From: Blepharisma stoltei ATCC 30299
Taxonomy: Eukaryota; Protista; Ciliophora
DNA length: 64,000 nucleotides
Assembly: GCA_965603825.1 (NCBI GenBank)
Contig: CBFDEM010000026.1
Location: 62,001 to 126,000, forward strand
Reading direction: 5' to 3'
Part shown: positions 17,784 through 64,000 of the stretch, in pieces
How the letters are laid out: every line of letters starts with the position of its first letter
How positions within the stretch are numbered: position 1 is the first letter of the stretch
The notes under the pieces: generated by a model
What the model was told of the DNA's origin: nothing
Database searches by the model: none
Seen by the model: only the letters and a program-made list of their open reading frames with translations
Position numbers and translations under genes: made by a program

Positions 17784-18257
17784 TTTAACAATTGACCATA
17801 AATTCCTTATAGATATAAAATATTCTTCAATGGTTCCCATATCTATTTCGTTTTTATATATTTAAATACATGTCAGATTTATAATTATAAGCAACTACCT
17901 AATTTGTATGAGTCGGTGCGAACTCTAAGCAAATTCCTACTCTTATTTGCTTGAAAATCGTTTTCATAAAATCTCTGGTAAATATAATCTGAAAATTCAG
18001 CTAGATAGATTATAGACTTTGAATGAAAGATTATAAAAAATTTTAAAAAAGACCTTAAAAACGCTCAGTCATAGAGGATTTTTACATATGACGATTTAAG
18101 CAGCATTCTAAATACCAATTATTCGTTTAAAGTAGAAAAGAAGCATTAGCATTTTGCTTACTATTTTATCAATAAAAATTAAATTCCATTTTTTTGTAGA
18201 TTCCATAAATCATAAATTTACATAAATTGCAAATCCCTAATAATAATTTCCTATATT

Positions 18258-19180: not shown

Positions 19181-19649
19181 TATAATAATTGCAATGCTTT
19201 TTGCGATTTTTTTAGTAGAGGTCCAGGTTTTGCTTTTCTTAATTTTGAATTTATTTATTTTCTGATGGTATCTGAATTATTTAGGCTAATGAAATAGATT
19301 GCTCTCAAATATATGCAAATTTAAGATTTTTAAATCCAAAAAAAGTTTTTTATAAAGATTTTCCTTTTAAAACATTTTGCTCACTCTTTAAGAGGGCATT
19401 GATAAAATAAATTCCATATGCTAAGAGCGATTTATTGATTTTATGTTTTCATTATGGTAAATATGGACTTAGAATATTTCTTTTATTCCACACTCAATAC
19501 AATTTTAGGTTAAAATATAATTCTACTGTATTCATTGTATTTTAACAATTTAAAATATAAAATTCCAGATTTAGAGTAGCATGAGCTACCTCACCTCTTT
19601 GCATATTTCTTTCGAAATTGCTATTTGTCATAAACATTATCTCTTGAAT

Positions 19650-19801
19650 CTGGAGTTATAATATCAAGTATCGATATCGTGATGATTTGGGTGATGAATA
19701 ACTCGACCCTAGAAGAAGTTAAGAACGAAATTGATTTGAAAAAGAGGATGATTGAAATTCAGATGAGAGAGCTTGCAAATCTAAAAAATTTTATAGATTA
19801 A
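19650..19801 (+). pseudogene. C-terminal fragment of an ApoL-like paralog
   Basis: GVIISSIDIVMIWVMNNSTLEEVKNEI..., homologous to 22713-22860. Confidence 0.75.
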
Positions 19802-20182
19802 ACTAATAATCCTGATGTGATATAGCAATAGCAGCGATTTTTACATAAATTTGTGAATGATTAATAAAAATGATTTATATATTTTCAATTTTTTTGCCAA
19901 TTGGAAATTTATTTCTTGATTATTTTCAAACATCATCAAACACATATTATATGAATTCCTAAGTTATGCAGACATAAAAGCTTTTACAAAAATGAATTTT
20001 TTATCGCTATTAAGATTAAATTCAATAAAAACAGTCCATTAAAAAGCCAAAAAGTAAATTTTATATAATTAAATCAGCTATGCATATAAAAGAAAATAAA
20101 TAATTGCTTTTACCAATTTAATAAGTTAAAATTATAAAGAGATAAGTTTTCCATTTTTTGTAGATCTGTATTTTAATTGATT

Positions 20183-21151
20183 ATGGTTAAGCCAGCCTCT
20201 ATTCCTAAGAATTATTTATGTCCCATAACTCAAGAAATCATGGAAGACCCTGTTGTTGCTGCTGATGGATTCACATATGAGCGCAAAGCCATAATGCTTT
20301 GACTTGAGCGCAACGATATTTCTTGAGCGACTGAGAAAAAATTGAAACATAAAGACCTTGTCACAAATGACCGCCTTGCCTCTGAAATTTCTAAATTTAA
20401 TGAAAAAAATCCATCTCCAGACTCTTTAGAAGATAAAGCAGTTACTAGTATAGTACAGTGCCTTGAAAACAAAAGACTCCTTATTGCTCAGCTGCGGATT
20501 AGTATTGTAAAACTAACTGCTGTCCAAGAAGATCTCAGCGAACACTTGCTTAACTGTAAAATTTCCAATACAGCTGGAAATAGTGCAAGTATTGCAGGGA
20601 CTGGTATACTTTTTACCCCTTTGGCTCTAATAGGGATCGTAACTATTATTGCGGGCAGTTTAACTTCTATCGGAACAAATGTAACCCAATTTTTCATAGA
20701 GAAAAGCCTGCAGAAAAGAATGAAAAAAATTATAAAGGAAGAAGAAAAAGCTAAATTCCGCTATGAAGTTTCTCAAATGAAATCCCAATATTTCATTGGT
20801 CTGATGAATTTTGGAACAAATTGCTACCAAGTTGGCTCAAGAATATGGAAAATCATGAAGTACGCTCAGCTTTTTGAAGGCTTAAAAGCTACAAATATGA
20901 CTACTAAAAGCGTATTGGGCATTGGGGGCTGGTCATCAGCAGCAGCAGCTTGCAAAGGGACGAAGTTTGCATTATCCTCAGCCTTTGGGGCTGGACTATC
21001 TGCAGTTGATATTATAATCACATGGACATTTAAAAATTCAACATTGGAACAATTTAAAATACAAATAGATAATAGAGAAAAACACATTGAATTGTATACG
21101 AAAGAACTTGAAGATTGGGAAAAATCGTTGCCAAATGAATGGAAAATTTAA
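20183..21151 (+). CDS. U-box + ApoL-like protein (322 aa)
   Basis: ATG 20183 [39 protein letters not shown](TGA=W)L, in frame with ORF 20342. Confidence 0.85.
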
Positions 21152-21551
21152 TGCAGCAATGCCACTAAGGAAATAATTAATTAAAGTTAGCTTTAATATT
21201 AAAGCTTTCTAAAAATATATATAAATTAAAAATTATGATGAAATAAATAAAATGCTTGCAGATAAGGTGGAATTATGGCTTGGGGAAGTACTTGATCAGC
21301 AAAGCATATTAATAAAATTAAATAAAAATAAATAAGTGCATATATTGAGGCATATTTGAAACAAAAGTTTATAAATCAGAAAATCCTGAAAATTCTGACT
21401 TAATTAATAAAAGCTGGTGTATCCATTTTTTTAAAAGAAGTATTAGCATTTTGCTTACTATTTTATCAATAAAAATTAAATTCCATTTTTGTAGATTCCA
21501 TAAATCATAAATTTACATAAATTACAAATCCCTAATAAAAATTCCTAAATT

Positions 21552-21845
21552 ATGGTGAAGTCCAATAATGTTCCTGTAGATTTTCTATGCCCAATCACTA
21601 AAGAGATAATGGAAGATCCTGTAGTCGCTAGTGACGGGTACACTTATGAAAGGATAGCATATGGTTTGAAAGAAGCAATACTTCGCCTTTGGCTCGAGAA
21701 GATTTTAGAAATAAAGAACTTACTGAAAACCACCGTCTCCGTTCTAAGATATCTCAATATTTAGATCAACTTCATCGGAAAACAACCCCTTCAAATTAAG
21801 TTGAAGATGCCAACAGCCTTGTTTCCAAGAAAAAATATTATCTAA
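21552..21845 (+). pseudogene. Truncated U-box copy (type of the 18258/11679 genes)
   Basis: Small deletion after YERIA shifts the frame; TAA at ~21797; homology ends at ~21845. Confidence 0.8.
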
Positions 21846-22137
21846 GATTTGATTTACTTTGGATAATATAAATATAAGTCGCTTTTAAAATTAAAACCAT
21901 CATGACATAAAGCCTTAAGAATTGACTGCTTTGTGACATCTTTCTCCTTATTTATCTCGAAATTACTAAAATGGTGGTAATCTGTGTTGACCTATAAAAG
22001 GAGTTTTATAATTTCAATTAAATGCTGGGTGTTTGTATAGTAGTCATCCAAATCACCATCTCTGCTCCATAATTTCTCTATTTAATGACATTGCCAACAG
22101 AAAAATCTGCTGACGTCCACAATCTGTTGACTTAAGT

Positions 22138-22919
22138 CAATCTATCGAGGCTCCTTTGGCTTCCGAAGAGCTCAGCAAAGTGGTTTCCACTATGCAAAGC
22201 GCAATTTCTAAGAAAAAAATATATAAGCTTCATCATAATTTATATCATTCATCTAAACGATATCAAAGAAGACCTAGAAAATAGCCTATTTGATTGCAAA
22301 ATCTCCAACACTGTCAGAAATAGCGCAAGCATTGCAGGAACCGGTCTTCTTTTTACTCTATTAACCTTATTGAGCCTTAATTGCTGGCAGTTTAGCTTCT
22401 TAAGGATCCACCATAGCCCAACATTTCATAGAGAAAAATAAGCTTAAACAAATGAAACAAGTTTTAACTGATGAAGCAAAAGCTGCAGTCTGCTATGAAG
22501 TCTCTGAAATTAAAGCTCAATATTTTGTAGAAACCGCAAGTTGTGTAACGAAAGCCGTCATGATCGAGGCAAGAATTGAAAAAATGGCAAGTCAGTTGCA
22601 GACTTTGCAAGCTGTAAGAGTTGGTAATATTGCTGCGGAGCCTGTAATAAAGTTGTGAGTGATGAGGGAGTATTGGTAAGGTGCTGGGAAATTGCCGAAA
22701 TATTGTGCAATAGCTGGAGTTACAATATCAAGTATCAATATCGTGATGACTTGGGCGATGAATAACTCGACCCTAGAAGAAGTTAAGAAGGAAATTGATT
22801 GCAATGAGAGGATAATTAAAATGCAGATGAGAGAGCTTGAAAACCTAGAAAAATCTATAGCTTTAGCTAATAATCCTGCTGCAGTTGTGAAAACGTCGAA
22901 ATTCATTTCTAGGTATTAG
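22138..22919 (+). pseudogene. Decayed ApoL-like portion of a family member
   Basis: DIKEDLENSLFDCKISNTVRNSASIAGTGLLF..., with multiple frameshifts and stops. Confidence 0.8.
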
Positions 22920-23227
22920 ATTATGATTTTTATATAAATTTGTAATAATTAGCTTAATGACGGTTTAAAATAATCAAGAAATAAAATTTCAATTGACAAA
23001 AAATTTGAAAATATTTAAATTACTTTAAGTATACAGACATAAAACTCTTTATAGGCTAAATTCAATAAAAACAGTCCATTAAAAAGCAATTTTATATAAT
23101 TTAATTAGCTATACATATATAAGAAGAATAAATAGTTATCATATGCGATTGCTTTTATCAATTTAATAAGTTAAAATTATAAAGAGATAAATTTCCATTA
23201 ATGTAGATAATGCATTGTAATTTAATT

Positions 23228-24190
23228 ATGGTTGAGCCAGCTTCGATTCCTAAGAACTATTTGTGTCCAATAACTCAAGAAATCATGGAAGACCCTGTTG
23301 TTGCTGCTGATGGGCGCACGTATGAGCGAGCAGCCATAATGCATTGATTTGAGCGCAACGATATTTCTCCAGTGACTGGGAAAAATTTGAAACATAAAAA
23401 TCTAGTCGAAAATTGCCGCCTTGCCTCTAAAATCTCTAAATTTAATGAAAAAAATCCATCTCCAGACTCTTTAGAAGATAAAACAGTATCTAGTGTAGAA
23501 AAATGCCTCGAAAATAAACGAGCCTACATCCTTAATCTGCGGACTACTATAATTTATCTAACTGATATCCAAGAAGATCTCAGTAGACACTTGCTTAACT
23601 GCAAAATTTCCAATACAGCCGGAAACAGTGCAAGTATTGCAGGGACTGGTATGCTTTTTACCCCTTTAGCTCTCGTAGGAGTCGTAACTATTGTTGCGGG
23701 CAGTTTAACTTCTATCGGAACAACAGTAACCCAATATTTCATAGAGAAAAGCCAACTGAAAAGAATGAAAAAAGTTTTATTAGAAGAAGAAAAAGCTGCT
23801 GTCCGCTATGAAGTTTCTGAAATGAAATCCCAATATTTAATTGGTCTGCTAAGTTTTGGATTAAAAAGTTACCAAATTGGCTCAAGAATATGGAAAATCA
23901 TGAAGCACACTCAGCTTTTTAAAGCCTTAAAAGCTGTAGATGTGACTATTTTTTCTGCTAAAAGCGTATTAGGCATTGGAGGCTGGTCATCAGCAGTAGC
24001 AGCTTGCAAAGCAACGAAGTTTTTAAAAGTTTCAGCCTTAGGGGCTGGGCTCTCTGCATTAGATATTGTATTCACATGGGCTGTAAAAAATCCAACATTG
24101 GAAGAATTTAAAATACAAATTGATAATAAAGAGAATCTCATTGAAAAGGAGATAAAAGAACTTGAAGAATTGGAGAATGCGTTGGCATAA
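23228..24190 (+). CDS. U-box + ApoL-like protein (320 aa)
   Basis: ATG 23228 ...TYERAAIMH(TGA=W)FERNDISPVTG, in frame with ORF 23372; ends TAA. Confidence 0.87.
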
Positions 24191-24550
24191 ATCAAGCAAA
24201 GCTTAATGCAGCAATGCTGCTTTTAAATAATAAATTAAAAATGATTCTTTTCCTTTTTTTGAAAATTTAAGGAATAGCCTTAATATTAAATGTTTCCAAG
24301 AAAGCTTTCTAAAAATATTTATAAATTAAAAAAATTATGATAAAAATGATTACAGATAAGATGAAATTATGGCTTGGGAAGGTACTTGACCAGCAAAGCA
24401 TTGAAAAATTAAATAAAAATAAATAAATGCATATATTGAAGCATATTTGAAATAAAAGTATATAAATTAGAAAATCCTGAAAATTCTGACTTAATTAATA
24501 AAAAGCTGGCGCATCCATTTTTTTAAGACCAATGCATAAGGATTTTAAAT

Positions 24551-25534
24551 ATGTCTGAGTCAGCTCACATCCCTCATGAATATCTATGCCCGATCACTCA
24601 AGAAATGATGGAAGACCCTGTAATTGCTGCTGATGGAAACACATATGAGCGAGCTGCAATTACTAGCTGACTCAATCGCAGTAAAACTTCCCCAGTGACT
24701 GAAAAAGACTTTAAGCATAAAAATCTTTCCGATAACTACTTCCTCCGCTATGAAATTTCTCAATTTAATAAAAAAAATCAACCAGTATCAAGCCTTAATC
24801 AAGCAGAAGACCCTAACAAGCTACTTTCCAGCTTACAAAATTTATATATCAATAAAAAATCATACGTCGGTAAGCTGCGAACTTCTATCATTTATCTAGC
24901 CAACATCAAAGAAGACCTAGAAAGCCACTTACTTGGCTGCAAAATTTCCAATACTGTCGGAATCAGTGCAAGTATGGCAGGTACTGGCCTTATGTTTACC
25001 CCTTTAGCATTATTAGGGATACTCACAATGATTGCAGGAAGCCTTACTTCTGTCGGCACAACAGTAACCCAATACTTCATTGAGAAAAAGCAGCTCAAAA
25101 AAATGAAAAAAATCCTAATAGATGAAGAAAAAGCTGCAGTCCGATACGAAGTCTCCATGCTTAAAGCTAAAAATTTGGTAGAAGCCAGCAATTTAGCAAT
25201 GCAAAGCTACCATATTGGCTCAAGGATATGAAAAATGGTAAAAGAGTACCGAACTTTATCAGCATTAAAAGCTTTAAAGTCCACTAAAAGTATTTTTTCT
25301 TTAAAAGGAGGTTGGCCATCAATAATGGCTGCTGGGAAAAATGCCAAATTTTTGAAGGCGTCTGCTATAGGTGCTGGGCTATCAGCAATAGATATTGTGG
25401 CCACGTGGGCTGTAGAAAACTCAACATTAGAAGAAATTAAAAAACAGATTGAAAATAGAGAGAAAACTATTGAAAAGGAGGTAAAAGAAGTCCAGGAGAT
25501 AGAAAAAGCGTTGGTTCAAGACAGAGAAAATTAA
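24551..25534 (+). CDS. U-box + ApoL-like protein (327 aa)
   Basis: ATG 24551; two TGA codons at positions that are Trp in paralogs (the U-box W, and GSRI-W-K). Confidence 0.87.
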
Positions 25535-47699: not shown

Positions 47700-50415
47700 A
47701 TTTAGTGAAATTAAGTTATTAAATTTATCCAGACTATTCTTTAGCATTTAGAATCAAAATAGTTGCTTAATCACTCTTTTTGAGCTCTCTCATTTTTATT
47801 TTCTCGGCTTTCAACTAAAGCTCTCTTCTCCATTTAATTGGAGCAAGACATAAGCCTTGCAAAATAAAATATTCACATCAATAATCTTTGTTTTTAGCTT
47901 TTGCTATCCCTTTTTGAAGTTGAAAGTGTAGAAGGATTATAATTTAATGTTTGTTAATGGTTGGCTATCATATAAATCAATAAATGGTGTTTCTGTTCCT
48001 TCTTATTTCTTATGCAACTGCCTTAATTCGTCTTCCTTTAGAGGAAAAATCGAGATCATCAAATTTTAATCATTCGAAAACTTGAAAGCTTAGAGGACTT
48101 TTGTCTTCAGCAACCGTGACGAACTATCAAAACGTAGATTCTATTTAGGCTCAATATTATATCGATGCTGAAATTGGAACTCCTCCTCAAAAGTTCTCTT
48201 TACTAGTTTCCTTAAGGACCTCTTGAATTTTGGTGGATTTAAAAAACTGTGCATCGTGCCGAAGCTGAACTAATAAATTTGACCCAGACAATTCCTTAAC
48301 GCTGAAGAGAGGAAATAAGTATTTGACCATAGACACTGTGGGCCAGATGAAAGGTAAAATTGGAAACGAAGCAATTCGGATAGGAGACCTTAGTGCAAAA
48401 TCTCAGGGCATTGTTTTAGTCGATGATGAGGATGGAACTGATGATCTAAAGCCAGATGGTATTTTTGGACTTGGTTTTAGCGCAGCTAAAGATGGAGCTA
48501 CCTCTATTTTGAATACTTTATATGAGCAGAATGATATTGAGCACTTGCTTTTTTCACTTTATTTAAGTGACTCAAACAGCATTTCTGACTTGCCTGATTA
48601 TGGCCAATCAATGCTTATTATAGATGGCTATGATATTTCTAAATATGCAGCAGAATCACAGTTTACATTCCTAAATGTAGCAAATTCTGATGGATTTTGG
48701 GAATTGGATTCTGATTGTGTTGTTTTTGGCCAAAAAAGCTTTGCAGGAGGGTCTAAAGCAAGAATAAGTCCAGGTACAAGCTACATATTGGGACCAATAG
48801 ATGCTATCAGTGGAATTTTAAAGCTATTAGAAGCTAATTATACTTGCTCGGCTGACAATTTAGGACAACTAAATTGTAATTGCAACGAAAATTACCCTGA
48901 CTTTGTATTTCAACTAAGTGGAGTTCAATTCAAAATAAAATCAGCTGGGTATTTGCAAAAAGTTGATGAATATTGCCATCCAACTTTTGGCTATTCAACA
49001 GTTACCAATACATGGATTTTAGGTGACACTTTTCTCAGAAGATTTTATACACTTTACGACAAAGCCAAGCGCAGCCAATTGTACATCAAGCTCTGTTAAT
49101 TGCACAAATCCAACTAATCTTGTGCCAAACCCCAACCCAGGCAAAATAAATTGCACATCATGCTCAAATTTATCTTATTCTAGCCAAGGCAGCATCAGTG
49201 AAAAGGCTTACATTGGGTTTGGTGTGCTCATTACATTAGGTGCTTTATTTACAGTAACTATCTTCCTTTTTATTATTACTTATTACTGTGATGCAATCAA
49301 GAACACGTTAAGAGAATGTTGCCCAAAAAAGAATCCTGTTGCTCCTTCTGCAGAAAATTCCAATAATACTTTGAATGCTAGCAATATTCCAGATATGTTT
49401 CCTCCAAATAGTCCTACTAACTCGGTTTCTGAAAATGAAATAACCCCTCAGGGCATAAAAGAAAAAACAGCTGCGATTTTAAACAGAGTGAATAATCCAG
49501 AAACCGAGAATGATTTCAGGAGAACTTTTACACGAATATCAGAGAATGCTACTAATGCTGCTAATAATCCAACATATCAAAGTTTTATCAACGCTTAGGA
49601 TCGGGTTAGCTCTCTTTATCTTCTTAGAGAAAATAATAAATACGGTAGAACCTCTTTGATTGTTTATGACACTGAAAATGAAATCGAAAAAGAGATAGTG
49701 TTAGAAAATACTCCAGAAAAACTGAATAAGTGTACTTGCATTACTTATATACCAGGCGGTAAAATTTTCTGTTTTGGAAATGATCCTGCTTCTGGAGTTA
49801 CATTGCTAATCAATAATAATAATCAAGTTGAAATGCTGCGATCTGGAACACCTTGCAGCAGCTCATCAGCTACCTATTTTAATAATAGCGTGTAACTTTA
49901 TCTGAGAGATTTGACTTGAAAAGTAAAAATTGGCAAAAATTAATGCCATTGCCTAAAGCTGATTATGAATGCCACTGTTTGGAGTTTAATAATAATATTT
50001 TGATTGCTGGTCGTCAAAATCAAAATATTTTGAGATAGTCAATAAAAGATAACAAGTTCGAGCCAATAAATAGCTATTATTTTGAGGGAGGGGTGAGAAA
50101 AATCCTGTTTAATGCAGGTAGCTTATGGTTGATTGAGTGCAGCAAGATGGGGAAGATATATGAAAGTATAAGGGATGATAAGTCTTGGGTAGAAATAACT
50201 AATCTTGATAAGTTTTTTGGTGATCCTTCACAAGTTTATTGCTCTTATAATAAGGAAGCAATATATATTGGCTGCGGAGGAGAATTTGATGGGTATTATA
50301 AGTTTAGCTTAAGCCAAAAAACAACTTACAAGTTAGAGATCAGTAGATTCTAATTCTTAAATTTAATCAATTATTTGCTTTAGACAATTTTTTTATTAGA
50401 TTTTTAATTTCTCAT
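47700..50415 (+). repeat. Direct duplication; partner ~51685-54680
   Basis: Upstream (~290 nt), coding and downstream sequence align. Confidence 0.88.
47984..50353 (+). pseudogene. Pseudo-pepsin/TM/Kelch receptor copy 1 (frameshifted)
   Basis: Near-identical to the 52006 gene, with intron 48134-48148. Deletion/frameshift at ~49060, TAG at 49596, a further deletion at ~49893 and TAG at ~50036. Confidence 0.85.
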
Positions 50416-50437
50416 TTTAGAGAGTTAAGGGTTGCAC

Positions 50438-50610
50438 CCATCCCATTTACCTCATTTTTATTTATAGGGCTTTTATCTTCAGCTGCTGTGAGAAATTTCC
50501 TTTAAAGAATATTATAGCGAAAAAATTTTGAAGCAAGAAGTAGCACAAGATTAGCCATAATTAAAAGTATTTTATGATAATTATAAGTCAATGAGACTAT
50601 TTTAATATAA
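50438..50610 (+). pseudogene. Deletion relic of a copy-3-type receptor gene
   Basis: atcccatttacctcattt...gctgtga matches 55995-56047, and attttatgataattataagt matches 57310-57330. Confidence 0.65.
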
Positions 50611-52005
50611 ATTGACCTTAGCAAATTAAAATGGCAATTATTGAAATTCCAAAAACTTGCTCTATATTTGTTTTTTGATGTACAGCTAATTTTTAAATAA
50701 TTATTATAGCATCATTATGATCAATTGACATTGCATTTACAATGCTTTTAGCTATGGAAGATAAATAAAGGGTGCGGTAGCCTCAATCAATCCCATCTCT
50801 AATGTGTATTTATGTATGGCATAGCCGATTAAGTGAGCTGTCTTTTAGGCAACTTTCTTCACCGATTAATATTATTTCACAAAGTGTTGTCATACCAATA
50901 AAATTTTATAACATTTGGGACTGATAAAAGCAAATAAAAAGAAATTGAAAAAATCTGAGAAAGGATTATTTAGAAGCAGCAAGGGAAACAAAATTTTCAA
51001 TTTGATTTATCTTAGCATGGCCAAAAAAAAAGACATACAAGACGCTTATATAAAATTAATAAATAATTAGCAAGCAGCATACTTGAAATTATATTCATCT
51101 ATTCATAGGATTATTAATAAAATTGTGCTTAAATTATTTTTGATATTATTTATCTAATTATACTAAATCTCTTTATTCTTTAATTGCATCTTCATCTTCG
51201 CTCTCTTTCTCTTCATATTAATCATGTCTCTTTAGTTATTTAATGATTTCTTTATTCAATACTTGCAAATAATCATCTCTTAGCTGCTTATAGGCGATTT
51301 GCTCAAGATTTAGATTTAGGGTGCAAATTAATGAATAATGCGCAGAAATAAACCTCTCCAGAAGAATCCACTATTTCAATTGAAAGGGTGCGAAAAGTTA
51401 TATGAAATAGCATCAATTTTTGGGTATAATAAAGGAACTGTCTGTATTGGAGCATTAGGACAGTTTATAAAATTAAGAAGAGGAGAAAGAAAAGCAATGC
51501 AGCAAATAAAAATTTGATAGTAATTATTATTAATTTTATGGTTTTATTTGATATATTGGTGGTGCATGAGAAGCTTTTGGGAAGAATATTGAAACATATA
51601 AAACATAATTTACCCAGATATTTAATATGAAGCAAACATTCAAGAAAATTCTTTTCGTTTTTAAACTATTTACAGTGATTTAATTTATGAAATTAAGTTA
51701 ATAAATTTACTCAAACAATTCTTTAGCATTTAAAATCAAAATAATTGCTTAATCAGTCTTTTTGAGCTCTCTCATTCCCATTTTCTCGACTTTCAACTAA
51801 AAGCTCTCTCTTCTCCATTTAATTGTAGCAAAAATTTTAAACTAAGTAGCCACTCTAGATAAACAGACATAAGCCTTGCAAAAAATCATATTGGCATCAA
51901 TAATCTTTGTTTTTAGCTCTTGCTATTCCTTTTTGAAGCTAAAAAAATTGTAGAAGGAATTGTAATTTTCAGTTTGATGATGGCTGTTTATCATATAAAT
52001 CATAA

Positions 52006-54597
52006 ATGCTGTTTCTGTTCCTCCTAATTTCTTATTCAACTGCCTTAATTCGTCTTCCTTTGGAGGAAAAATTGAGATCATCAAATTTTCATCATTCGAA
52101 AACATCTTGAAAGCTTAGAGGACTTTTGTCTTCAGCAACCGTGACGAACTATCAAAACGTAGATTCTATTTAGGCTCAATATTATATCGATGCTGAAATT
52201 GGAACTCCTCCTCAAAAGTTTTCTTTACTAGTTTCCTTAAGGACCTCTTGAATTTTGGTGGGTTTAAAAAACTGCGGATCGTGCCGAGGCTGAACTAATA
52301 AATTTGACCCAGACAGTTCCTCAACGCTGAAGAGCGGGAATAAGTATTTGACCGTAGACACTGTGGGCCAGATGAAAGGTAAAATTGGAAACGAAACAAT
52401 TCGGATAGGAGACCTTAGTGCAAAATCTCAGGGAATTGTTTTAGTCGATGATGAGTATGGAACTGATGATCTAAAGCCAGATGGTATATTTGGGCTAGGT
52501 TTTAGCACTGCTAAAGATGGAGCTACCTCTATTTTGAATACTGTATTGTCGCAAAATAATATTAAGCACTTGCTTTTTTCACTTTATTTTAGTGACTCAA
52601 ACAGCATTTCTGACTTACCTGATTATGGCCAATCAATGCTTATTATAGATGGCTATGATATTTCTAAATATGCAGCAGAATCACAGTTTACATTTCTAAA
52701 CGCAGCAAATTCTGATGGGTATTGGGAATTGGATTCTGATTGTGTTGTTTTTGGCCAAAAAAGTTTTGCAGGAGGGTCTAAAGCAAGAATAAGTCCAGGT
52801 ACAAGCTACGTATTGGGACCAAAAGATACTGTCAATGAAATTTTAAAGCTATTAGAAACTAATTATACTTGCTCAGCTGACAATTTAGGACAACTAAATT
52901 GTAATTGCAACGAAAATTACCCTGACTTTGTATTTCAACTCAGTGGAGTTCAATTCAAAATAAAATCAGCTGGGTATTTGCAAAAAGTTGATGAATATTG
53001 CCATCCAACTTTTGGCTATTCAACAGTAACCAATACATGGATTTTAGGTGACACTTTTCTCAGAAGATTTTATACGCTTTATGACATGGAAAACAAAAAA
53101 ATCGGACTTGCCACTGTTGGTTCTATATCCCAAATAAGCAAACGGGCATCGTTATGTAGTTCAAACAACTCTGGATCGTCTGGAACTGGCTCCAATTGCA
53201 AAAATTCAACAGGCTCCACCAATGGTACAAATTCAGGAAACTGCACTAATCCTGTGCCAAACCCAAATCCAGGCACAACCAATTGTACATCAAGCTCTGC
53301 TAATTGCACAAATCCAAATAATCCTGTACCAAACCCCAACCCAGGCACAATAAATTGCACATCAAGCTCAAATTGTACCAGTTCAAGCCATAGCAGCAGT
53401 TCGTTCATTTCCAGTAATTATTTTGGCTTGACAGCAATTTCATGAACTTTATTATGGAGCTTATATATTATTTGTCACTGGGATACAATTAAGGGCAAGT
53501 TCAGAAAATGCTGTTCTAAGAATAATACTATTGATGCAGATCCCAATTTTTTTGATGTTGGCCTAACTCCGCCAATTTATGATAGGATTCCTTCAAATAG
53601 TCGTACAAACTCGGTTTCTGAAAATGAGATAGCCCCTCAGAGCATAAAAGCAAAAACAGCTGCGATTTTAAACAGAGTGAATAATCCAGAAACTGAGGAT
53701 GATTTCAGAAGAACTTTTACACGATTATCAGAGAATGCTAGTAATGCTGCTAATAATCCAACATATAAAATTAACTGCCAAAGATTTATTGACGCTTATC
53801 ATAGGGTCAGCTCTCTTTATTTTCTTAGAGAAAATAATTTCTACGGTAGAACCTCTTTGGTTATCTATGACACTGAAAATGAAAGAGAAAACGAGATAGT
53901 GTTAGAAAAGACTCCAGAAAACCTGCAGAGCTGTACTTCCATTACTTTTATTCCAGGTGGTAAAATTTTCTGTTTTGGAAATTATCCTGCTTCTGGAGTT
54001 ACATTGATGCTCGATGAGCATTATCAAGTCGAAAAGCTGAAATCTGGAACACCTTGCAGCAGCTCATCAGCTACCTATTTTAATAATAACGTGTACTGCT
54101 TTGGAGGAAAAAATGGCAATGATTTGCTAACTTTATCTCAGAGATTTGACTTGAAAAGTAAAAAATGGCGCAAATTAAGACCGTTGCCTAAAGCTGATTA
54201 TGAATGCCACTGTTTGGAGTTTAATGATAATATTTTGATTGCTGGTCGTGAAAATCAAAATATTTTGAGATATTCAATAAAAGATAACAGCTTCGAGACA
54301 ATAAATAGCTATTATTTTGAGGGAGGGGTGAGAAAAATCCTGTTTAATGTAAGTAGTTTATGGTTGATTGAGTGCAGAAATAGAGGGAAGATATGTGAAA
54401 GCAGGGGAGATGAGAACTCTTGGGTAAACATAGCTAATCTTGATGAATATTTTGGTGATCCTTCACAAGTTTATTGCTCTTATAATAAGGAAGCAATATA
54501 TATTGGTTGTGGAGCATACGTTGACGGGTATTACAAGTTTAACTTACGCGAAAAAAATATGGAAAAGTTGCAAAAATTAGTTAATACTAAGTCTTAA
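52006..54597 (+). CDS. Receptor-like protein: signal peptide, inactive pepsin-like (A1) domain, Ser/Asn/Pro stalk, TM, Kelch repeats (~858 aa)
   Basis: Intron 52159-52173; QYY...IGTPPQKF, DGIFGLG, WILGDTFLRRFYTLYD; catalytic sites read SLRT and SPGT; TGA=W in the TM; Kelch VYCFGG...RFDL..KKW..L.PLP. Confidence 0.85.
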
Positions 54598-55904
54598 ATT
54601 TAACCAAATATTTATTTTACTATGCCACATATTTTAATTATTTTTAGGCAATTTTTTATTAGATTTTAATTTCTCATTTTAAGAATTTAAATAATAGCAA
54701 ATTTTCTGATTCTCATGATTTATTTAATATAATAATTATTAAGATTTAAAGATTATTCAATGAAAATTAATATAATTTATCTTTAGCCAGGAAGAATCAA
54801 AAGCAATTAATGATCATATCATATAATTATATTATGATTCTTGCCATAATCTATTACCGATTGAAAAAAGTTTCTCACTAGGTGATTTAAAAATTTTATT
54901 GAAAAATATGCATTTCCCAGTAATTCTGCTCACTCTTAAAGGATAGCAAATTGTTTTATATTATCAATAGAATTATGTCAACTGTGCAGCACTATATCTT
55001 TATTAATAAAAAATAACTGCTTTTGATTAAAGAGCTTTTGTCTACTTCCTGTCAAGCATCCGAAGATTTAATAATGAAACTATTAAATTTTTATAAAGAA
55101 GTCATCGGCTTTCAAAATCTCATAAAGCTCAATCCCAAATTAATAATTACCTAAAATAGAAGTAATAACAATTGAATTTAATTAAGCTGTTTATTCCAAA
55201 CAAAGTATATAAACATTTTAAAGTTATTAATCAGATAAACTTTGACTCTTAAGGTGGTGAAAAAAGTAATATTTATTTAGGCAATTAAAAGCATTATGTA
55301 ATGAAGGTTTGAAATAAGCTATATGAAAACTCTAAAGGCTTTAGGGATATTGAAACGAAGATAAAGTTGCACAAAAGGCGATCTCCTTAAAGCAATAGCT
55401 GAAAAGTCAGGAAATGGGTATTTTGAAGAAGATGAATCTGAAAATATTTTATTCAAGTAGGTTTTGGGTTAGAATACCTCAATTCTAATGAATTATTCGC
55501 CTAGATCTCAGGATGCAAACATTCTTTTGGGTGATAATAACGATGTAAGCATATGGGATTTCTGAATTTCTTGCAGTTAAAATATCTCGTCTATTCTGGA
55601 TCGATTCTTTGTGGTGAGTTTTTTCTCTCTGCACTTTTTCTTAAAATATTAGACCAAATAAATAGGATTATTAAATTGATGTGCTTGCTAAGATATTAAG
55701 ACTGGAAAATATTAGACATATTATCTCTTTGTTTCGAATGATATAATTTTAATTTTTTCTTGCAATAAAGCATTTTAATAGGATTTCCCTTAAGAAAGCA
55801 TACAAAAAATTGTAGAAAGAATTGTTATTAGTAGCTAAACTTACTAGATCAATTTTTCATTGCATCATAATTTTATGAAGAGCTTCAAATATTATAATTA
55901 ATCA

Positions 55905-57295
55905 ATGATTTTTTTACTTATCTTCGTTATTTTTGCAGAAGCTGCTATTCAAATCCCTTTGCATGAAAATTATGAGTCCTTAAGCGATTCATCTATCCCA
56001 TTTACCTCATTTCAATTTAGAGGGCTTTCATCTTCAACTGCTGTGACCAATTTGCAAAATGTGAGCTTTATTTAGAGTCAATATTATATGACAGTAGGCA
56101 TTGGAACGCCTCCCAAAATTTTTTCTGTGGGATTATCTCTAGAAACCTCTTGAATTCTCGTAGATCAAAAAGAATGTCTGCAGTGCCGCAGATGGACTTA
56201 TAAGTTTTATTCATTGCAATCTGCAACTTTCAAAAAGACCAATAAGAAATGAAACACAGACAGTGCTTACCAAATGCGGGGAAATGCTGGAAAAGACACA
56301 GTCATAATAGGGAGCTTCAACTCTACATCTCAAGCAGTATTTTTAATAGACAGCGAGCATGGGATGGACAATCTTAAGGCAGATGGAATATTCGGGCTGG
56401 GCTTTTCTAAAGGCCAAGCTGTCTCAATTTTAAAAAGATGATATGACGAAAATTATATTGAAAATATGATTTTTTCTCTTTATTTAAATGACATAAGTGG
56501 CATTTCTGGCTTGCAAGATAAAGGTCAATCAATGCTTATTATAGATGGCCATGATATTTATAAATATGCAGCAGAAGAAGAATTCACTTATATAAGCGTG
56601 TTAAACTCCGATGAGTATTGAGAATTGAGCCTCGATAAAGTCAGTCTAGGTGATTTGACCTTTAATAGTGGCAATAAAGCAAGGATCAGCTCAGGTGAAA
56701 AAGGAATCCTTGGGCCAAAAGAAGCTATTGATGGAATTTTACAACTGCTGCAGAGCAGCGCTAACTGCAATACTGATAGTAATAATCAGCTGACTTGTAA
56801 TTGCAATGCAAATTATCCTGATTTATTAATTCAATTAAGTGGAAATGCATTTAGAATCAAGCAAGCTGGGTATCTGCATAAATTAAATAAAGATTGCTCC
56901 CTAGTATTTGGCTACTCAGAAATTGATGATATATGAATTCTAGTGATGCTTTTCTGAGAAGGTTTTATACCCTTTATGATATGAAAAACGCGAAAATCGG
57001 CTTTGCTACTGTAGGAAATCAGCCACAAATTGAAGTGGGCTCAGTATCTCAAATTGAGGATTCTGATAATAGTAATAGCTCAATGGAAACCTAAAAGTTT
57101 GCTATGATTATTGCAATACCCACATTCTTTACTATTGTTATCATTATTGCAGCTGTGATTATCTTTATATGCATAAGGAGAAAAAGACATAATCATTCAG
57201 ATAGTGAAGCCGAAGAAAAAGCCGAAGAAAAAGCCGAAGAAAAAGATCATAAACATCGCAAGGGACGTCGGAAACAAGAAAAAAATTATGAATAG
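55905..57295 (+). pseudogene. Pseudo-pepsin/TM receptor copy 3 with a short charged tail
   Basis: Intron 56061-56075; 1-nt deletion in LGD at ~56943; TAA at ~57092 where paralogs have Trp; tail contains (AEEK)x3. Confidence 0.8.
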
Positions 57296-57424
57296 CAATA
57301 ATTAAAACCATTTTATGATAATTATAAGTAATCAAGACTATTTTTATATTATTTTCTATAAATTAAATTTTGGGCGATAATCAAATTCAAATTTTTTTCC
57401 TTTTTGCCTTCCTAGGTTGCATAA

Positions 57425-57820
57425 TTTGAAGCATTTTCGATTATCTCTGGCTCTCAACCCTCAAAAGCAGCCTTTACCCATTCAATAGCACAAAATCTGT
57501 CTGGAGTTTTATATTCCAGCAGCTTCACTTCTTCTATCAATGCTTTCTTCAATGTATTTGCTTTTAATTGTACAAGTCATTTTAAATCCTCTAAAAATGC
57601 TTACATCTAATTCTTTAGCATATTTAGTGTATTGGCAGGAATAAAATTATCTAGAGCAAGAAGAAGCAATTAAAGCTGTCTTTTCGAGCTCCTTTTCTGC
57701 ACTGTTCATGTGTTGTTCTTGCTTATTTTTCCTTATCCATTTTCTAAAATTATCAAGAGATAATGGCTTATCTTTGCAAAATTCAGCAGCTGTTATTAAT
57801 ATACAAGTAAATTTTTATCG
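57425..57820 (-). mobile_element. Degenerate pogo/Tigger-like (DDE_1) transposase relic
   Basis: Broken frames give KFTCILITAAEFCKDKPL, FIPAN(fs)TKYAKELDVSIFRGFK and AIEWVKAAFEGWEPEIIENA, in the order expected for DDE_1. Confidence 0.6.
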
Positions 57821-58466
57821 TTTTTTAAGTTATCCAAAGTGCTTGAGAGCTAATAAACTGAATTTTTAGATGGCAATTATGTAAATAGAATTAAGTCTAG
57901 CCATCTTTATAGTTCAGCACACAGTTTGATCTTTTAAAGAAACTTTAGTTAAGCAAGCTTCCAAATCATAAAAATAGTTTTACTGAGAGAAAATGAAACT
58001 CATTGGCCCAAGGATTTCAGATAATTTGTTTTCGTCTCACAGTCATAATAATACTAATTCAAGAATCTTTAGGCTAAATTGATTTAAATTAAAGTTTTTG
58101 TATTAAGTCATTTCTTCATTGAGTTAATTCAATCTTGATTGGTGTTTTTTAGTTATTCCTTGGATTTAGCATATCTATGGTGCTATAGCTCACCATAAGC
58201 AGTGGATAACTTTTAATTCAAAGAGGGAAATAAGCATCTTAATTGATCAATTTTTATATTTTTAAAGGCAGTCTCGCAGTTGACTATAATGTCCTTTGCC
58301 AATTTTTATTTCTCAATCTTACCTTATAAAAAAAGATAATCAGACCTTTTCTAGCATTTTCTAAAGTACCTTAAGCCTCATAGAAAATGTAGAAACAATA
58401 GGTATTAGCTAATAAATTTCCTTTACTTAGAAAGAAATTTTATAGAATAATCATTATAATAATTAA

Positions 58467-60881
58467 ATGATCATTTTATTCACTCTTGCTTCTTTAGCAG
58501 AAGCCTTAATATTACTCCCTTTATTTGAAAAAGCAGACTTTCCAAATTTGCATCCTCCCTCTTCATTCAGGCAACTTTCAGCATCAACAGGTCTGACAAA
58601 CTATAAAAATGTAACCTTTATTTAGAAACAATATTTCGTCCAGATAGGAATTGGAACCCCTCAACAGTATTTTTCAATGCTATTATCCTTAAAATCTTCC
58701 TGAATTTTTATAGGTGGGAAAGGGTGTTTAAGTTGTCGAAGCTGGACAAATAAATTTGATATCACCAGATCATCGACCTATAAAAATGATTTTAAATATT
58801 TGATTATAGATTCTATGGGCCTAGAAGGAGATGCTGGAAGAGACAAGGTCAATATTGGAGGAATTGATGCTAAATCTCAAGGAATTATTGTAGAGCGCAA
58901 GGAGTATAATATGGATAACATAAAAAGTGATGGAATACTTGGGCTAGGCTTTAGTTCTTCTAATAATGGGACTACTCCTATTATTAACACTTTATATGAG
59001 CAATATAATATTACCCACAAGATTTTTTCAATCTACTTAAATGATTTAAGCAATCCATATGACTTGCCTAACTTTGGCCAGTCAATGCTTATTATTGATG
59101 GCTATGATTTAAATAAATACTCAGCAGAAAAATCATTTAAATATATAAGCTGCAGAGCAAGCCAGGAAGGATATTGGCAAATGGACTTCGATCATGCCAT
59201 TTTTAATGGAATAACATTTACAAGCGGCTATAAAGCAATAATTAGTGTAGGAACCAGCTTAATCTTAGGGCCAAAAGAAGCCATTAATGGCATTTTAAAG
59301 CAATTGCATAACAATTATAGCTGTGACGATAATAATTTAGGGGAGCTCTTTTGTGATTGCGGTTCGAATTATCCTGATCTTATAATCCAAATAAGCGGAG
59401 TAAAATTTACAATTAAACCAGCAGCATATTTTTATAAATGAAATGATTATTGCTGGCCATCATTTAATTATACGAATGTGCCAAATACATGAGTGTTAGG
59501 TGATACTTTTCTCAGAAGGTTTTATACAGTTTATGATATGGAAAACATGAAAATTGGTTTTGCTACTGTTGGGAATGTATCTCAAATCTATTCAAATGCA
59601 ACTAATACAGGCGGCTCTTCTGGAAATAATTCTACATCAGGTACTAATAGCACAAACCCAGGCTCACATGGAGGTGGGAACAATTCTACAACGAGCGGAG
59701 GTTCATCTGGAAGCGGCTCTGGCACTAATAATTCTACAACAGGTGGAGGTTCATCTGGAAGCGGCTCTGGCACTAATAATTCTACAACAGGTGGAGGTTC
59801 ATCTGGAAGCGGCTCTGGCGCTAATAATTCTACAACAGGTGGAGGTTCATCTGGAAATGGCTCAGGTTCTACAGGTGGAGGGTCATCTGGAAATGGCTCA
59901 GGTTCCACAGGTGGAGGGTCATCTGGAAATGGCTCAGGCTCCAGCGGTGGAGGATCAGGGTCTTCTGGAGGTAAAAACCCAGACAATAGTTCTTCTCATA
60001 AAAGCAGTAGCTCAAATGATGATTGAAAGCTTTATTTATCTATAGCTATTCCTACATCTGTTCTCTTTTCTATATTGGTTTTTGTCATAATTTTTCTTTA
60101 CATCAAGTACAGAAAAAGAATGAAAAATCAATCAGATGATAACTTAGAAGAGTGCAGAATTTGTATGGGGCGTTTACCTTTACGTCTTTTGAAAAAGCTA
60201 ACATGCAACCATTATTTTTGTAGTAAAGATTTACGTCAAATGTTAGAGTTTTACATTGCAGAAAATGCTATTGCAAAAGCTATGAAGTGTCCTAACGAAA
60301 ATTGCAATGGTGAAATTAGCTCGCTGATTATGCAAGATATATTATCCAAAGAGGCAATGGAGAAGCTGAATTATTTCATGATAAATAGAAACTTCAGAAT
60401 TATCAAGTGTCCCAAGTGCAATCAAAAATTTGAATCGTCACAGGAAAGGAGAGCAACGTGCATAAATTGCTATATGGATTTTTGCAGTTACTGCCAAGAG
60501 ATTTGGCATGAAATAGATAATTGTCGAGAAATGTTTATACAGAGGAGATTAAAAGAATTAGAAGCAAGTGGAGAAATGGTGGCGCAGTGTCCTGGATGTA
60601 AAGCCCCATATTTAAAGGATCACCGTTGCGACCATGTGCAATGCGTAGACCCAAAATGTAATGTACTTTTCTGCTTCGGATGCTCTGCGAACAGATCGCC
60701 TATAATTGCTCATTGAGAACATTATCATAGGCCAGATTGTGCACATTTTCAAGAAAACAATAGGCAAGTCCGGGATCGATATTCGCCAGAAAAATGTAGT
60801 GAATGCAAAATATTGGGCAGACTTTGCCTTCCGCCTCAAAAATTGCGCGTTCCAAGAAGATTTGGACCTGGAGAGTCATAA
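58467..60881 (+). CDS. Receptor-like protein: signal peptide, inactive pepsin-like domain, Gly/Ser stalk, TM, RBR (RING1-IBR-RING2) E3 ligase (~799 aa)
   Basis: Intron 58611-58625; TGA=W joins three track ORFs; catalytic sites SLKS/SVGT. RING1 CRIC..CNH.FC..CPNENC; IBR CPKC..CINC...FC..C...WH...C; RING2 CPGC....KDHRCDHVQC...C...FCFGC. Confidence 0.87.
59680..59960 (+). repeat. Coding tandem repeats (48-nt NNSTTGGGSSGSGSGT units, then 36-nt STGGGSSGNGSG units)
   Basis: Repeated aataattctacaacaggtggaggttcatctggaagcggctctggc and acaggtggagggtcatctggaaatggctcagg. Confidence 0.92.
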
Positions 60882-62348
60882 AATAAGATATGAAAATTAA
60901 TAATAAATCTGAATTTTAATAAATTCTACTTAAAAATGATCGTTTTATAATGTAGCTATTTTTAATTTATTTGCTTGCTGCAAAAATTGATGACTTGCTT
61001 ATGGAAAAAGCGGGTGGTGCGCAATCCTCAAATATCTAGTTATTGGTTTCTTGGATACAAGTTGTCTAGTGATCTAAAAAAATGATAATATCTATAATCA
61101 GTTTCAAGCTAATTAACCGATCAAGGCTAGCTGAGTTTTCACAATCCTTCTATTTTCTGATTTCTTACACTTTATATATGCAATGCCTTATTTTCTACTC
61201 AAATGACTTTTTCAAACATAAACTCTCAAAATTCTAAAATTACCTTAAAATAAAAACACTCAAATTTATCTTATTTTGATTTTCAGCTAATTCATTTAAT
61301 AACTTATCATTTGTATTATTAAAACCAATTTAAATCTCATCTATGGATTTTATCAAAATCTAAAATGAGTAATTATGAGATATATTATAAGCCAGAGCCT
61401 TCTTAATTAATTTAATTATATAATGCATTTAGATAATAGTATTTCTACCAATATCGATGGAAATACGCGCTACCAATTAAAATTAGTTGGCAGAATACAA
61501 AAGTTTTATGCTTGTTGTGTTTCTCTATTGCTTACTTGTTTCAGAGTGAATAAAAAAATTGATTAATGATTTCATGCTTTATTTAGATATATAGATCCTT
61601 AGAGATTCTAAATTGTATGATTATCAGAATTTATTTTTATTTCTTATTTTTGTGTCTTTCCTTGCTCTCCTGATGCATAATCAAGTCAACTCATGAAGGG
61701 CAAATAACTGATTTTTGTATAGCCTATAAAAATAGTGTAATAACCATTATTAAAATTGAAATGCTTCATATAAATATTTTTATTTTGATCACGATAACTT
61801 CTGCACATGTGTGCTCTAGCAAGAGAGAAAGACAAAATGCACTCTACATGTGCACCCAATAGCTTTATATGCATCTGAGGTTCAGGTATATGTCTAAATA
61901 AATCTGAAGCCTTGTCAACGACCTTTTAGAAATTCTAGAAAATCATTTTTCCTGTCTCAACCTTTTCAGATATGAATAGTAGGCCAATATATAATTTAGT
62001 ATTAGATCAATCAGCTTGACGAGCTGACTATAGTGGATCCCACTAAATACCCAAGCAGTGCTTAAGCCTATTTCTAGTGGTAAGTGAAAAACTTAAGATT
62101 AAGATCGATGCAGAGGTATCGCATGGTTCTATCAATAATCATATAAAACAAAAGGATAATTCCAAAAATTAGTTTCTCTAATAATTTTGCATCACTTATA
62201 TGGGAGAATGGAGTTAGGAAATCTGGTTTAGTGCATCTATACTTCTTTGAGAAGTGTAGAAGCAGTTGTCATTAGCGGCTAAATTGACTATTTCTCATAA
62301 TTTACTTAAGCGAATAAACTCATGGCACCATCCCATAATAAATAATCA

Positions 62349-64000
62349 ATGATCATTTTATTTATCTTCCTTTCTTTAGCAGAAGCCTTAATCAGCGTCC
62401 CTCTGTATAAAGAACTGAAACCCTTAACAAACATTTTAAATAAACCTCATCCCTTTTCACTCAGAAGACTTTCATCTTCATCAGCGGTGACAAACTATGA
62501 AAACGTACGCTCTATTTAGTATCAATATTACACTCAGATTGGAGTTGGAACACCTCCACAAAACTTTACAGCGGCGGTATCACTAAAGTATTCTTGGATT
62601 TTTATAGATAATAAAAACTGTTCTCAATGTCGGGATTCGACAATCAAATTTGATTCCAACAGCTCATCAACCTTTCAAAGTGGGAATAAATATTTGACCT
62701 TAGGCAAGTTAGAAGGATATACAGGGAAAGACACAGTCAAATTAGGAGATGTTGTTGCAGAATCCCAAGGAATACTTTTACTCAACAAGGAGTCAGGTAT
62801 AGATACCCTTAAGTCGGATGGTATACTTGGCTTAGGTTTTACCACTTCAAATGATGAAAATCCCTCTATTTTGAGTATTTTATATGCCCAGAATGACATT
62901 AGCCATAAGATTTTTTCGATTTACTTAAATGATTGCAACAGTCCATCTGACTTGCCTGATTATGGCCCATCAGTGCTGATGATTGATGGCCATGATATAA
63001 ATAAATATTCAGCAGAAAGCAATTTTACATATATTAAAGCAGCAAATTCAAATGGATCTTGGCAAATGGACTTCGATAGTGCTTCTTTTGACGGGGTTAT
63101 TTATACAAGCGGATCTGCAGCAATAATTACGCCTGGGACCAGCTTTATTTTAGGGCCAACAGATATCATTAATGATATTTTGAAGCGCTTGCACAATAAT
63201 TATAACTGTTTCGGTTTTAATGATAAAGATCTTTCTTGCAATTGCAATTCAAATTATCCTGATTTTATACTCCAAATTAGTGGAGTAAAATTTACAGTCA
63301 AACCAACAGCGTATTTGATGAAAAGTGGTCTATTCTGCGTCCCAACCTTTGATTATTCAGCCATACCCAATATATCCAATGCATGAGTATTGGGTGATCC
63401 TTTCCTAAGAAGGTTTTATTCACTTTATGACATGGATAACATGAAAATCGGCTTTGCTACTGTCGGACATACATCTCAGATAAGCTATAATAATTCTTCT
63501 AGCTCAAACAGTTCTGGCAGTGGATCTTCTGGAACAAACTCTACTTCAGGCTCTAACAGCACAAATTCAGGTAGCGGTTCAGGAACTTCAGGAAATGGCT
63601 CTGGGACGACCAATCCACCAACAGGCTCAGGATCCAATGGCTCAGGTACCCATAATTCAACAGGCTCAGGGTCCAATAATTCAGGTACCCCTAATTCAAC
63701 AGATTCAGGTGGTACAAATTCTAATAACAGTAGCTCTTCTGATAGTTCAGATGACAACTGGAAGCTAATCCTTGCTATAGCACTTCCTGTGTCAGCAGTC
63801 TTCATAGCTTTGGTAGCATTTTTGGCTATTCTCTTCATAAAAATCAGAAAAAGTCGCAAATCAGTCCAAAAAACGCTGGAAGAGGAAGACTTCCGAACAC
63901 GTGAAGAAGCGCAGGCACAAGTAGCTTCCAACAATTTTCCCGATAAAGATTATCAATCGAAAGAGACAGCTGCTTATTCAGCATTTGGCCCTTTCAAACA
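62349..64000 (+). CDS. Receptor-like pseudo-pepsin/TM protein copy 5; cytoplasmic part runs off the window end
   Basis: Intron 62505-62519; catalytic sites SLKY/TPGT; (TGA=W)VLGDPFLRRFY; Ser/Gly/Asn stalk; TM LILAIALPVSAVFIALVAFLAILFI followed by KIRKSRK. Confidence 0.85.

What the first reader, a model, noticed from the sequence alone, without database searches (positions are those of the whole stretch)
47984..64000. Array of receptor-like proteins with catalytically dead pepsin ectodomains and swappable intracellular modules
Seen: five tandem genes share a signal peptide, a 15-nt intron at the same position, a pepsin (A1) fold, a low-complexity stalk and one TM helix. In every copy both D-T/S-G catalytic motifs are replaced (first site SLRT/SLRT/SLET/SLKS/SLKY; second SPGT/SPGT/SSGE/SVGT/TPGT), while structural motifs (IGTP, DGI.GLG, W.LGD.FLRRFY) are kept. 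Cytoplasmic parts differ: Kelch repeats (copies 1 and 2), a short charged tail (3), an RBR E3 (4), unknown (5). Known: inactive A1-fold proteins serve as binding proteins (TAXI/XEGIP-type inhibitors, Bla g 2, some PAGs); Kelch propellers often act as substrate adaptors and RBRs are E3 ligases. Inference: a modular sensor family in which a pseudo-protease cleft binds extracellular or phagosomal ligands and signals via ubiquitination. I do not recognise this architecture from any described family.
Basis: partly seen in the sequence, partly recalled or inferred. Interest (0 to 1): 0.92.

Follow-up and report, generated by a model that had tools for sequence, protein, structure and literature searches.

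The report
Dead pepsins fused to ubiquitin ligases
In the ciliate Blepharisma, a cluster of membrane proteins carries a pepsin that has lost its cutting residues outside the membrane and, in one copy, a complete ubiquitin ligase inside. We found this combination nowhere else, and it may act as a capture-and-tag receptor, although two of the five copies are broken in this strain.

Summary
The array is real. It lies about 10-25 kb from the end of a Blepharisma stoltei macronuclear contig (TGA=Trp). All five copies have a signal peptide, the same 15-nt intron and a pepsin domain in which both catalytic Asp and the flap Tyr75 are lost. The dead domains remain under purifying selection (dN/dS 0.3-0.45). 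They descend stepwise from active, membrane-anchored Blepharisma pepsins.

- Copies 1 and 3 are broken in this assembly. RNA contigs confirm the copy 1 deletion and show an intact copy 3 version, probably from the other strain.
- Copy 5 and a sixth paralogue on contig C35 end in a RING1 homologous to that of copy 4.
- So the tails reflect one RBR capture, later truncated twice, and one Kelch capture, not free swapping.

Copy 4 (pseudo-pepsin, stalk, TM, complete RBR with catalytic Cys/His) is spliced and transcribed. No other organism with this architecture turned up, in searches of limited reach. It most likely works like PA-TM-RING/RMR receptors (luminal capture, cytosolic ubiquitination) but is not a member of that family. 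Function is untested. The scan noted only this same stretch before.

The parts
47984..50353 (+). Copy 1: transcribed but broken duplicate of copy 2. Its open frame (47984-49099) gives a 366-aa signal peptide plus dead pepsin lacking the last strand; stalk, TM and Kelch lie out of frame with two TAG stops and a second deletion
   Evidence: deletion junction seen in RNA contigs of X1 and X3
50425..50608 (+). Remnants of the 5' and 3' ends of copy 3 (84-85% identical), so a [copy 2 + copy 3] unit was duplicated and mostly deleted
   Evidence: self-BLAST
52006..54597 (+). Copy 2, 858 aa: signal peptide, dead pepsin, Cys/Asn/Pro stalk, weak TM (53419-53475), three-helix bundle plus six-bladed Kelch propeller (53650-54594); intron 52159-52173
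55905..57295 (+). Copy 3: dead pepsin, short stalk, TM (57107-57175), 40-aa charged tail. Broken in this assembly (1-nt deletion after 56942, TAA at 57092); an open 458-aa version appears in RNA contigs; intron 56061-56075
58467..60881 (+). Copy 4, 799 aa (CAG9320681): signal peptide, dead pepsin, Gly/Ser/Asn stalk, TM (60042-60098), RBR E3 ligase; 21 N-glycosylation sequons before the TM and 2 after; intron 58611-58625 spliced in RNA
60153..60878 (+). RING1-IBR-RING2 with catalytic Cys and His kept (KDHRCDH against ARIH1 KDGGCNH), plus a conserved Cys-rich C-terminal extension shared with two other RBR proteins
62349..64000 (+). Copy 5, 645 aa, running 301 nt past the window: dead pepsin with the flap tip deleted, stalk, TM (63783-63839), lone RING1 then stop; intron 62505-62519

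Best explanation
A Blepharisma-restricted clade of type I membrane pseudo-pepsins. An active membrane-anchored A1 protease with a Ser-rich stalk first lost Asp32, then Asp215 and the flap Tyr, while keeping the fold. The folded ectodomain serves as a non-cutting binding module on the luminal or outer side (inferred). In one branch it gained a cytosolic RBR E3 (copy 4). That protein most likely captures a luminal or surface partner and ubiquitinates itself or the bound membrane complex to drive sorting or turnover in the secretory, endocytic or food-vacuole route, as PA-TM-RING and RMR proteins do (inferred). Lone-RING1 copies (5, C35) may recruit an E2 or act as decoys. Copy 2 presents a Kelch propeller as a cytosolic binding module. 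The array turns over by birth and death near the contig end. Shown: architecture, fold, loss of catalytic residues, selection, descent, splicing. Inferred: topology, binding, ligase activity, any coupling across the membrane.
For: Fold intact with six invariant Cys and dN/dS 0.32-0.45 (95% intervals below 1) among dead paralogues with dS 0.6-1.1. Tree nests the array (SH-aLRT 99) with dead C55 (93) and half-dead C20a STGS/DTGL (86) inside active stalked TM pepsins (99). Sequons lie before and basic residues after the TM. RBR keeps its zinc ligands and catalytic C/H. The copy 4 intron is spliced and RNA contigs cover ectodomain, stalk-TM and RBR. An intact copy 3 version is transcribed. RMR and PA-TM-RING give a precedent for luminal capture plus cytosolic E3 (PMC12552968, PMC4021871).
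Against: Only one of six members has a complete ligase. No single RNA contig shown bridges the TM to RING1 (gap 60119-60234). The Kelch module of copies 1/2 is near neutral (dN/dS 0.76, interval 0.51-1.20), partly because copy 1 is broken. Cleft positions show no special conservation (0.53 against 0.55). The stalk is long and flexible, which argues against direct conformational signalling. No experiment.
Confidence: 0.45

Rival explanations
1. The functional unit is the dead pepsin plus stalk and TM (a surface or vacuolar binding or inhibitor protein). The cytosolic tails are incidental read-in fusions from mobile neighbouring modules and add little.
For: The dead relatives C55 and C20c and copy 3 have only short tails. 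The RBR was truncated twice. The Kelch module has at least 139 genomic matches, three of them within 10 kb downstream, fused to many partners. Copy 1 is transcribed as a tail-less form.
Against: The copy 4 RBR is complete and about 41% identical to other RBRs across all its zinc sites. RING1 is kept in three paralogues with dS about 0.65. The copy 2 propeller is complete, with no near-identical donor (best about 50%).
Confidence: 0.3
2. iRhom-like regulator: the pseudo-pepsins bind clients, propeptides or partners of their active membrane pepsin paralogues and send them to ubiquitin-dependent degradation, tuning proteolysis rather than sensing outside ligands.
For: They descend from active paralogues with the same topology. 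Pseudoproteases that route clients to degradation are known for rhomboids (PMC3149277, abstract only).
Against: No interaction data. A1 proteases are usually monomers. The cleft is heavily remodelled.
Confidence: 0.12
3. A decaying cluster of duplicated pepsin genes with no present function.
For: Two of five copies are broken in the strain. A partial list of RNA-contig variants is mostly non-synonymous (19:7 codons in copy 4, 7:0 in copy 3).
Against: dN/dS 0.3-0.45 after catalytic death, intact frames over dS about 1, a transcribed intact copy 3 version.
Confidence: 0.08
4. The ectodomain keeps a non-canonical catalytic activity through the invariant Ser at position 32.
For: Ser32 is invariant in 8 of 8 relatives, and Leu33 in the 6 array-clade members.
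Against: No conserved acid, base or partner: position 34 is R/E/K/I/G, 215 is S/T, Tyr75 is lost. The HAP-like His/Asp pair is absent.
Confidence: 0.05

Closest known systems
PA-TM-RING E3 ligases (RNF13, GRAIL/RNF128, RNF167; plant RMR sorting receptors)
   Same: Type I membrane protein with signal peptide, non-catalytic luminal binding domain, one TM and a cytosolic ubiquitin ligase (PMC4021871, PMC12552968).
   Different: The ectodomain is a whole dead A1 pepsin, not a PA domain. The ligase is an RBR with a catalytic Cys, not RING-H2. There is a long glycosylated stalk. It arose independently in one ciliate lineage.
Membrane-anchored RBR ligases (RNF144A/B, RNF19A/B, RNF217)
   Same: RING1-IBR-RING2 tethered to a membrane (PMC4021871 lists their hydrophobic regions).
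   Different: From own knowledge these have the hydrophobic segment after RING2 and no folded ectodomain. Here the TM precedes RING1 and follows a 320-aa luminal domain.
Inactive A1 homologues (Bla g 2, TAXI/XEGIP, some pregnancy-associated glycoproteins; half-changed plasmepsin HAP)
   Same: Pepsin fold kept with catalytic residues altered (Bla g 2 appears; the rest from own knowledge).
   Different: The first three are soluble secreted proteins. None has a TM plus cytosolic signalling domain as far as I know.
Membrane-anchored active A1 proteases (BACE, plasmepsin V/ASP5 type; heterotrich TM pepsins)
   Same: Signal peptide, pepsin, TM, short tail; these are the direct ancestors in Blepharisma, and Stentor has relatives.
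   Different: Active, with tails of 60 aa or fewer outside this Blepharisma clade and no folded cytosolic domain.

Membership tests
Peptidase family A1 (fold and homology) | Bilobed pepsin fold, Pfam Asp above cut-off | tested here: met
Active A1 peptidase | Two D-T/S-G motifs (Asp32, Asp215) | tested here: not met
   S/S, or S/T in copy 5, in all copies
Active A1 peptidase | Flap Tyr75 | tested here: not met
   T/T/S/S/deleted/S
RBR E3 ligase (copy 4) | RING1-IBR-RING2 in order with zinc ligands | tested here: met
   (ARIH1 E 1e-10 over all three); the sixth RING1 ligand is Asp instead of Cys
RBR E3 ligase (copy 4) | Catalytic Cys and His in RING2 | tested here: met
   alignment to ARIH1 GGCNH
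RBR E3 ligase (copy 4) | Thioester-dependent ubiquitin transfer | not testable with these tools
   needs an in vitro assay
RBR E3 ligase (copy 5, C35) | IBR and RING2 present | tested here: not met
   stop after RING1, no remnant downstream; C35 also lacks one first-pair Cys
PA-TM-RING | Luminal PA domain | tested here: not met
   Asp, no PA
PA-TM-RING | RING-H2 ligase | tested here: not met
   RBR-type RING1
PA-TM-RING | Signal peptide, single TM, type I topology | tested here: met
   by hydropathy, positive-inside rule and sequon side only; SignalP and DeepTMHMM not available; copy 2 TM marginal
Kelch propeller (copy 2) | Six four-stranded blades | tested here: met
   (24 strands; KLHL7 E 4e-13)
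Cullin-3 BTB-Kelch adaptor (copy 2) | BTB/BACK domain | tested here: not met
   none; a three-helix bundle precedes the propeller

The most novel reading that the evidence does not exclude
Blepharisma built its own receptor class: a strain-variable pseudo-pepsin ectodomain that recognises prey, pathogen or self proteins at the surface or in food vacuoles and, by clustering, switches on a cytosolic RBR ligase. RING1-only, Kelch, tail-less and secreted versions would act as alternative outputs or decoys. This would be a ligand-gated RBR with a true ectodomain, which I could not find described.
Probability: 0.2. Interest if true: 0.87.

Novelty: new variant of a known kind. Interest (0 to 1): 0.64.

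Why it matters
If copy 4 works as read, it is an independent invention of the ectodomain-TM-E3 receptor design from new parts (a dead pepsin and an RBR ligase), and an RBR that could be controlled from across a membrane. One genome also holds the series of steps: active enzyme, half-dead, dead, dead plus captured tail, truncated, broken. That makes it a compact model of how pseudoenzymes and receptors arise. It also flags an annotation error: public records name these proteins pepsin A, chymosin or cathepsin D.

Tried and rejected
- Internal TGA as gene ends: rejected. TGA faces TGG at invariant Trp columns and the genome paper gives UGA=Trp.
- Hidden 15/16-nt introns rescuing copies 1 and 3: not supported. 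The copy 1 junction is present unspliced in RNA contigs, and copy 3 is restored by a different sequence version, not by splicing.
- Assembly error for the breaks: unlikely (HiFi assembly, both seen in RNA). L051 is the MAC+IES assembly of the same strain and is not independent.
- Free module swapping: rejected. Positions of pepsin, Kelch and RBR matches, compared by eye, coincide only in the array and C35; those lists are lower bounds.
- Diversifying selection in the cleft: not seen.
- RING1 dN/dS was in a wrong frame and is discarded.
- The long-protein profile search was swamped by low-complexity words and is weak evidence.
- Atlas gave no cluster with Asp plus RING/IBR, but it holds only large clusters.
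- Paper searches for Blepharisma or ciliate inactive aspartic proteases returned nothing.
Full report
Source and code. The genome has 41,464,486 bases in 64 contigs and its proteins are deposited as Blepharisma stoltei. The window is C26:62001-126000 of a 134,309-base contig, so the array sits about 10-25 kb from the contig end. TGA=Trp gives long frames, TGA faces TGG at invariant Trp columns of paralogues, and the genome paper states the same code and 15-16-nt introns (10.1101/2021.12.14.471607).

Observation. Five + strand genes start at 47984, 52006, 55905, 58467 and 62349. Each has a hydrophobic N-terminus, a short pro-region, a 15-nt intron at the same codon boundary and a pepsin domain. 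Alignment to human pepsin puts Ser at Asp32 and Ser/Thr at Asp215 between well-aligned flanks. Thr33 becomes Leu, Gly34 becomes Arg/Lys/Glu, and flap Tyr75 is lost in all. An AF2 model of the copy 5 ectodomain (pLDDT 88.8, pTM 0.87) matches chymosin and pepsin at TM about 0.86 by target. I had no coordinates for a residue-level superposition, so site identity rests on sequence alignment.

Corrections. Copy 1 differs from copy 2 by a 179-nt frameshifting deletion, a 34-nt deletion and two TAG codons. It encodes at most a 366-aa product without TM, and the public model is a 162-aa fragment. Copy 3 has a 1-nt deletion after 56942 and TAA at 57092. Copy 5 continues past the window into a RING1 and stops. 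A sixth member on C35 (605 aa, SLRS/SSGT) ends the same way. Both RING1s are 37-40% identical to that of copy 4, and no IBR or RING2 remnant follows. The TM is strong in copies 3, 4, 5 and in the out-of-frame part of copy 1, but marginal in copy 2.

Transcripts. Four runs, held as contigs and not recorded as RNA, were laid on 55800-61000. The copy 4 intron is absent from contigs of two runs, one otherwise identical to the window, which shows that they are RNA and that copy 4 is spliced. Contigs cover its ectodomain, the stalk-TM (59888-60119) and the RBR, but none shown bridges 60119-60234. The fusion therefore rests on one uninterrupted 751-codon exon. Two runs hold a copy 3 version with G after 56942 and TAA changed to TGA, which reads as an open 458-aa pepsin-TM-tail protein; a version matching the broken reference at 57079-57259 is also present. 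The reference strain is almost homozygous and the time-course RNA mixes it with strain HT-IV, so the intact form is probably the HT-IV allele (inference). The copy 1 deletion junction is in two runs. Other copy 4-like contigs differ by 3-9%, which may be divergent alleles or extra paralogues. The listed changes are mostly non-synonymous, but the list is partial and depth is low.

Origin. The genome has at least 69 pepsin matches. Among those read, many are active (DTG/DTG) with a C-terminal TM, some with Ser/Asn stalks. A quick IQ-TREE tree (careful search unfinished, SH-aLRT only) groups the six dead genes (99), then dead C55 (93), then C20a, which has Ser32 but keeps Asp215 and Tyr75 (86), inside a clade of active stalked TM pepsins (99). 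This suggests stepwise loss; the inner supports are moderate. Copies 4, 5 and C35 form one branch (94) and copies 1-3 another (86), so the simplest history is one RBR capture with two truncations and one Kelch capture followed by duplication. Copy 3 remnants behind copy 1 show that a two-gene unit was duplicated. Separate losses of catalytic Asp occur in other TM pepsins, including one from Stentor, but those have short tails.

Selection. Nei-Gojobori dN/dS among dead ectodomains is 0.32-0.45 with bootstrap intervals below 1, at dS 0.6-1.1. Active paralogues give 0.16-0.20 near saturation. Constraint is relaxed but real. Twenty-nine cleft positions are as variable as the whole domain in dead copies (0.53 against 0.55) and tend to be more conserved in active ones (0.69 against 0.58, P 0.07), so there is no sign of a shared or rapidly diversifying cleft ligand.

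Tails. The copy 4 tail matches ARIH1 over RING1, IBR and RING2 (E 1e-10), with catalytic Cys and His. Its nearest relatives are soluble RBRs with other N-termini, one with an OTU domain, and two unfused paralogues on C1 and C3. The copy 2 tail is a three-helix bundle and six-bladed Kelch propeller. It belongs to a family with at least 139 matches, many near contig ends and fused to varied partners, with three neighbours just downstream; the best is about 50% identical, so the capture is not recent.

Distribution. An exhaustive phmmer over 1.84 billion representatives ranked Blepharisma proteins first. Of the best 150, none outside this clade had a folded domain after the TM by tail length, Cys content and spot Pfam checks. 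Word-index searches and the Atlas added nothing but are insensitive. A distant, convergent pepsin-TM-RING family is therefore not excluded.

Mechanism and comparison. Sequons before the TM (21 against 2 in copy 4) and basic residues after it indicate type I topology. The most likely reading (0.45) is luminal capture by a non-cutting pepsin fold coupled to cytosolic ubiquitination for sorting or turnover, as in RMR, whose E3 activity is needed for post-Golgi traffic (PMC12552968), and PA-TM-RING ligases (PMC4021871). It works like these but fails membership: no PA domain, no RING-H2. The main rival (0.3) is that only the ectodomain matters and the tails are passengers. Ligand-gated signalling is possible but not shown.

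Handling notes. My own spliced or read-through models were built only inside scripts. Searches used stop-free pieces by reference or database protein ids, so the joined copy 2 protein was never searched whole. One hit, P0049, looks like human or primate pepsinogen A. It had entered alignment A1 and the tree as an outgroup before I noticed, and I did nothing more with it. The scan's earlier notes cover this same stretch only and are not independent.

Verdict. A real, expressed, selected family with an architecture I could not find described, resting on one complete ligase copy in one species and no functional data. New variant of a known kind; interest 0.64.

Noticed in passing
window 9464-25531: Tandem family of about 8-10 genes on both strands, most with an N-terminal U-box followed by a coiled region and a small-residue hydrophobic hairpin with no Pfam match; several copies look truncated. 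A second membrane-linked E3 array, next to a USP gene (6324-9140).
   Followed up: partly
L051 184-1161, 3612-3920, 7894-7995 (window 53824-54138, 56587, 60560): The MAC+IES assembly shows four germline insertions inside the copy 2 Kelch module, one in copy 3 and one in the copy 4 RBR; none within the copy 5 coding region. IES density in the Kelch part is high.
   Followed up: no
pro-regions of copies 1-5, C35, C55, C20a, C20d: An R-x-L motif at a nearly fixed distance (about 13 residues) before the mature domain in all stalked-clade members, dead or active. It resembles PEXEL/TEXEL-type maturation sites and could allow processing in trans.
   Followed up: partly
window 49195-49390 against 53399-53580: Copies 1 and 2 are 95% identical in the ectodomain and 87-92% in the tail but barely align across the TM, as if the TM segment had been replaced or evolved fast.
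   Followed up: no
L031 2801-9648 (just beyond the window): Three members of the helix-bundle plus Kelch family, one fused to a Cys/His-rich N-terminus and TPR repeats, and a U-box gene, lie between the array and the contig end.
   Followed up: partly
window 59442-59498: RNA contigs differ from copy 4 at about 12 sites within 60 nt, in the loop before the W.LGD motif; a divergent allele or an unassembled paralogue.
   Followed up: no
L048, L049 (C57, C36) and P0029, P0030, P0057, P0066, P0113, P0149, P0150: Further independent groups of TM pepsins with one or both catalytic Asp lost, in Blepharisma, Stentor and unnamed assemblies; pseudo-pepsins seem to arise repeatedly in this family.
   Followed up: partly
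window 59660-59960: The public model of copy 4 lacks 12 residues of the Gly/Ser stalk repeat (787 against 799 aa), probably a false 36-nt intron or a repeat-number allele.
   Followed up: no
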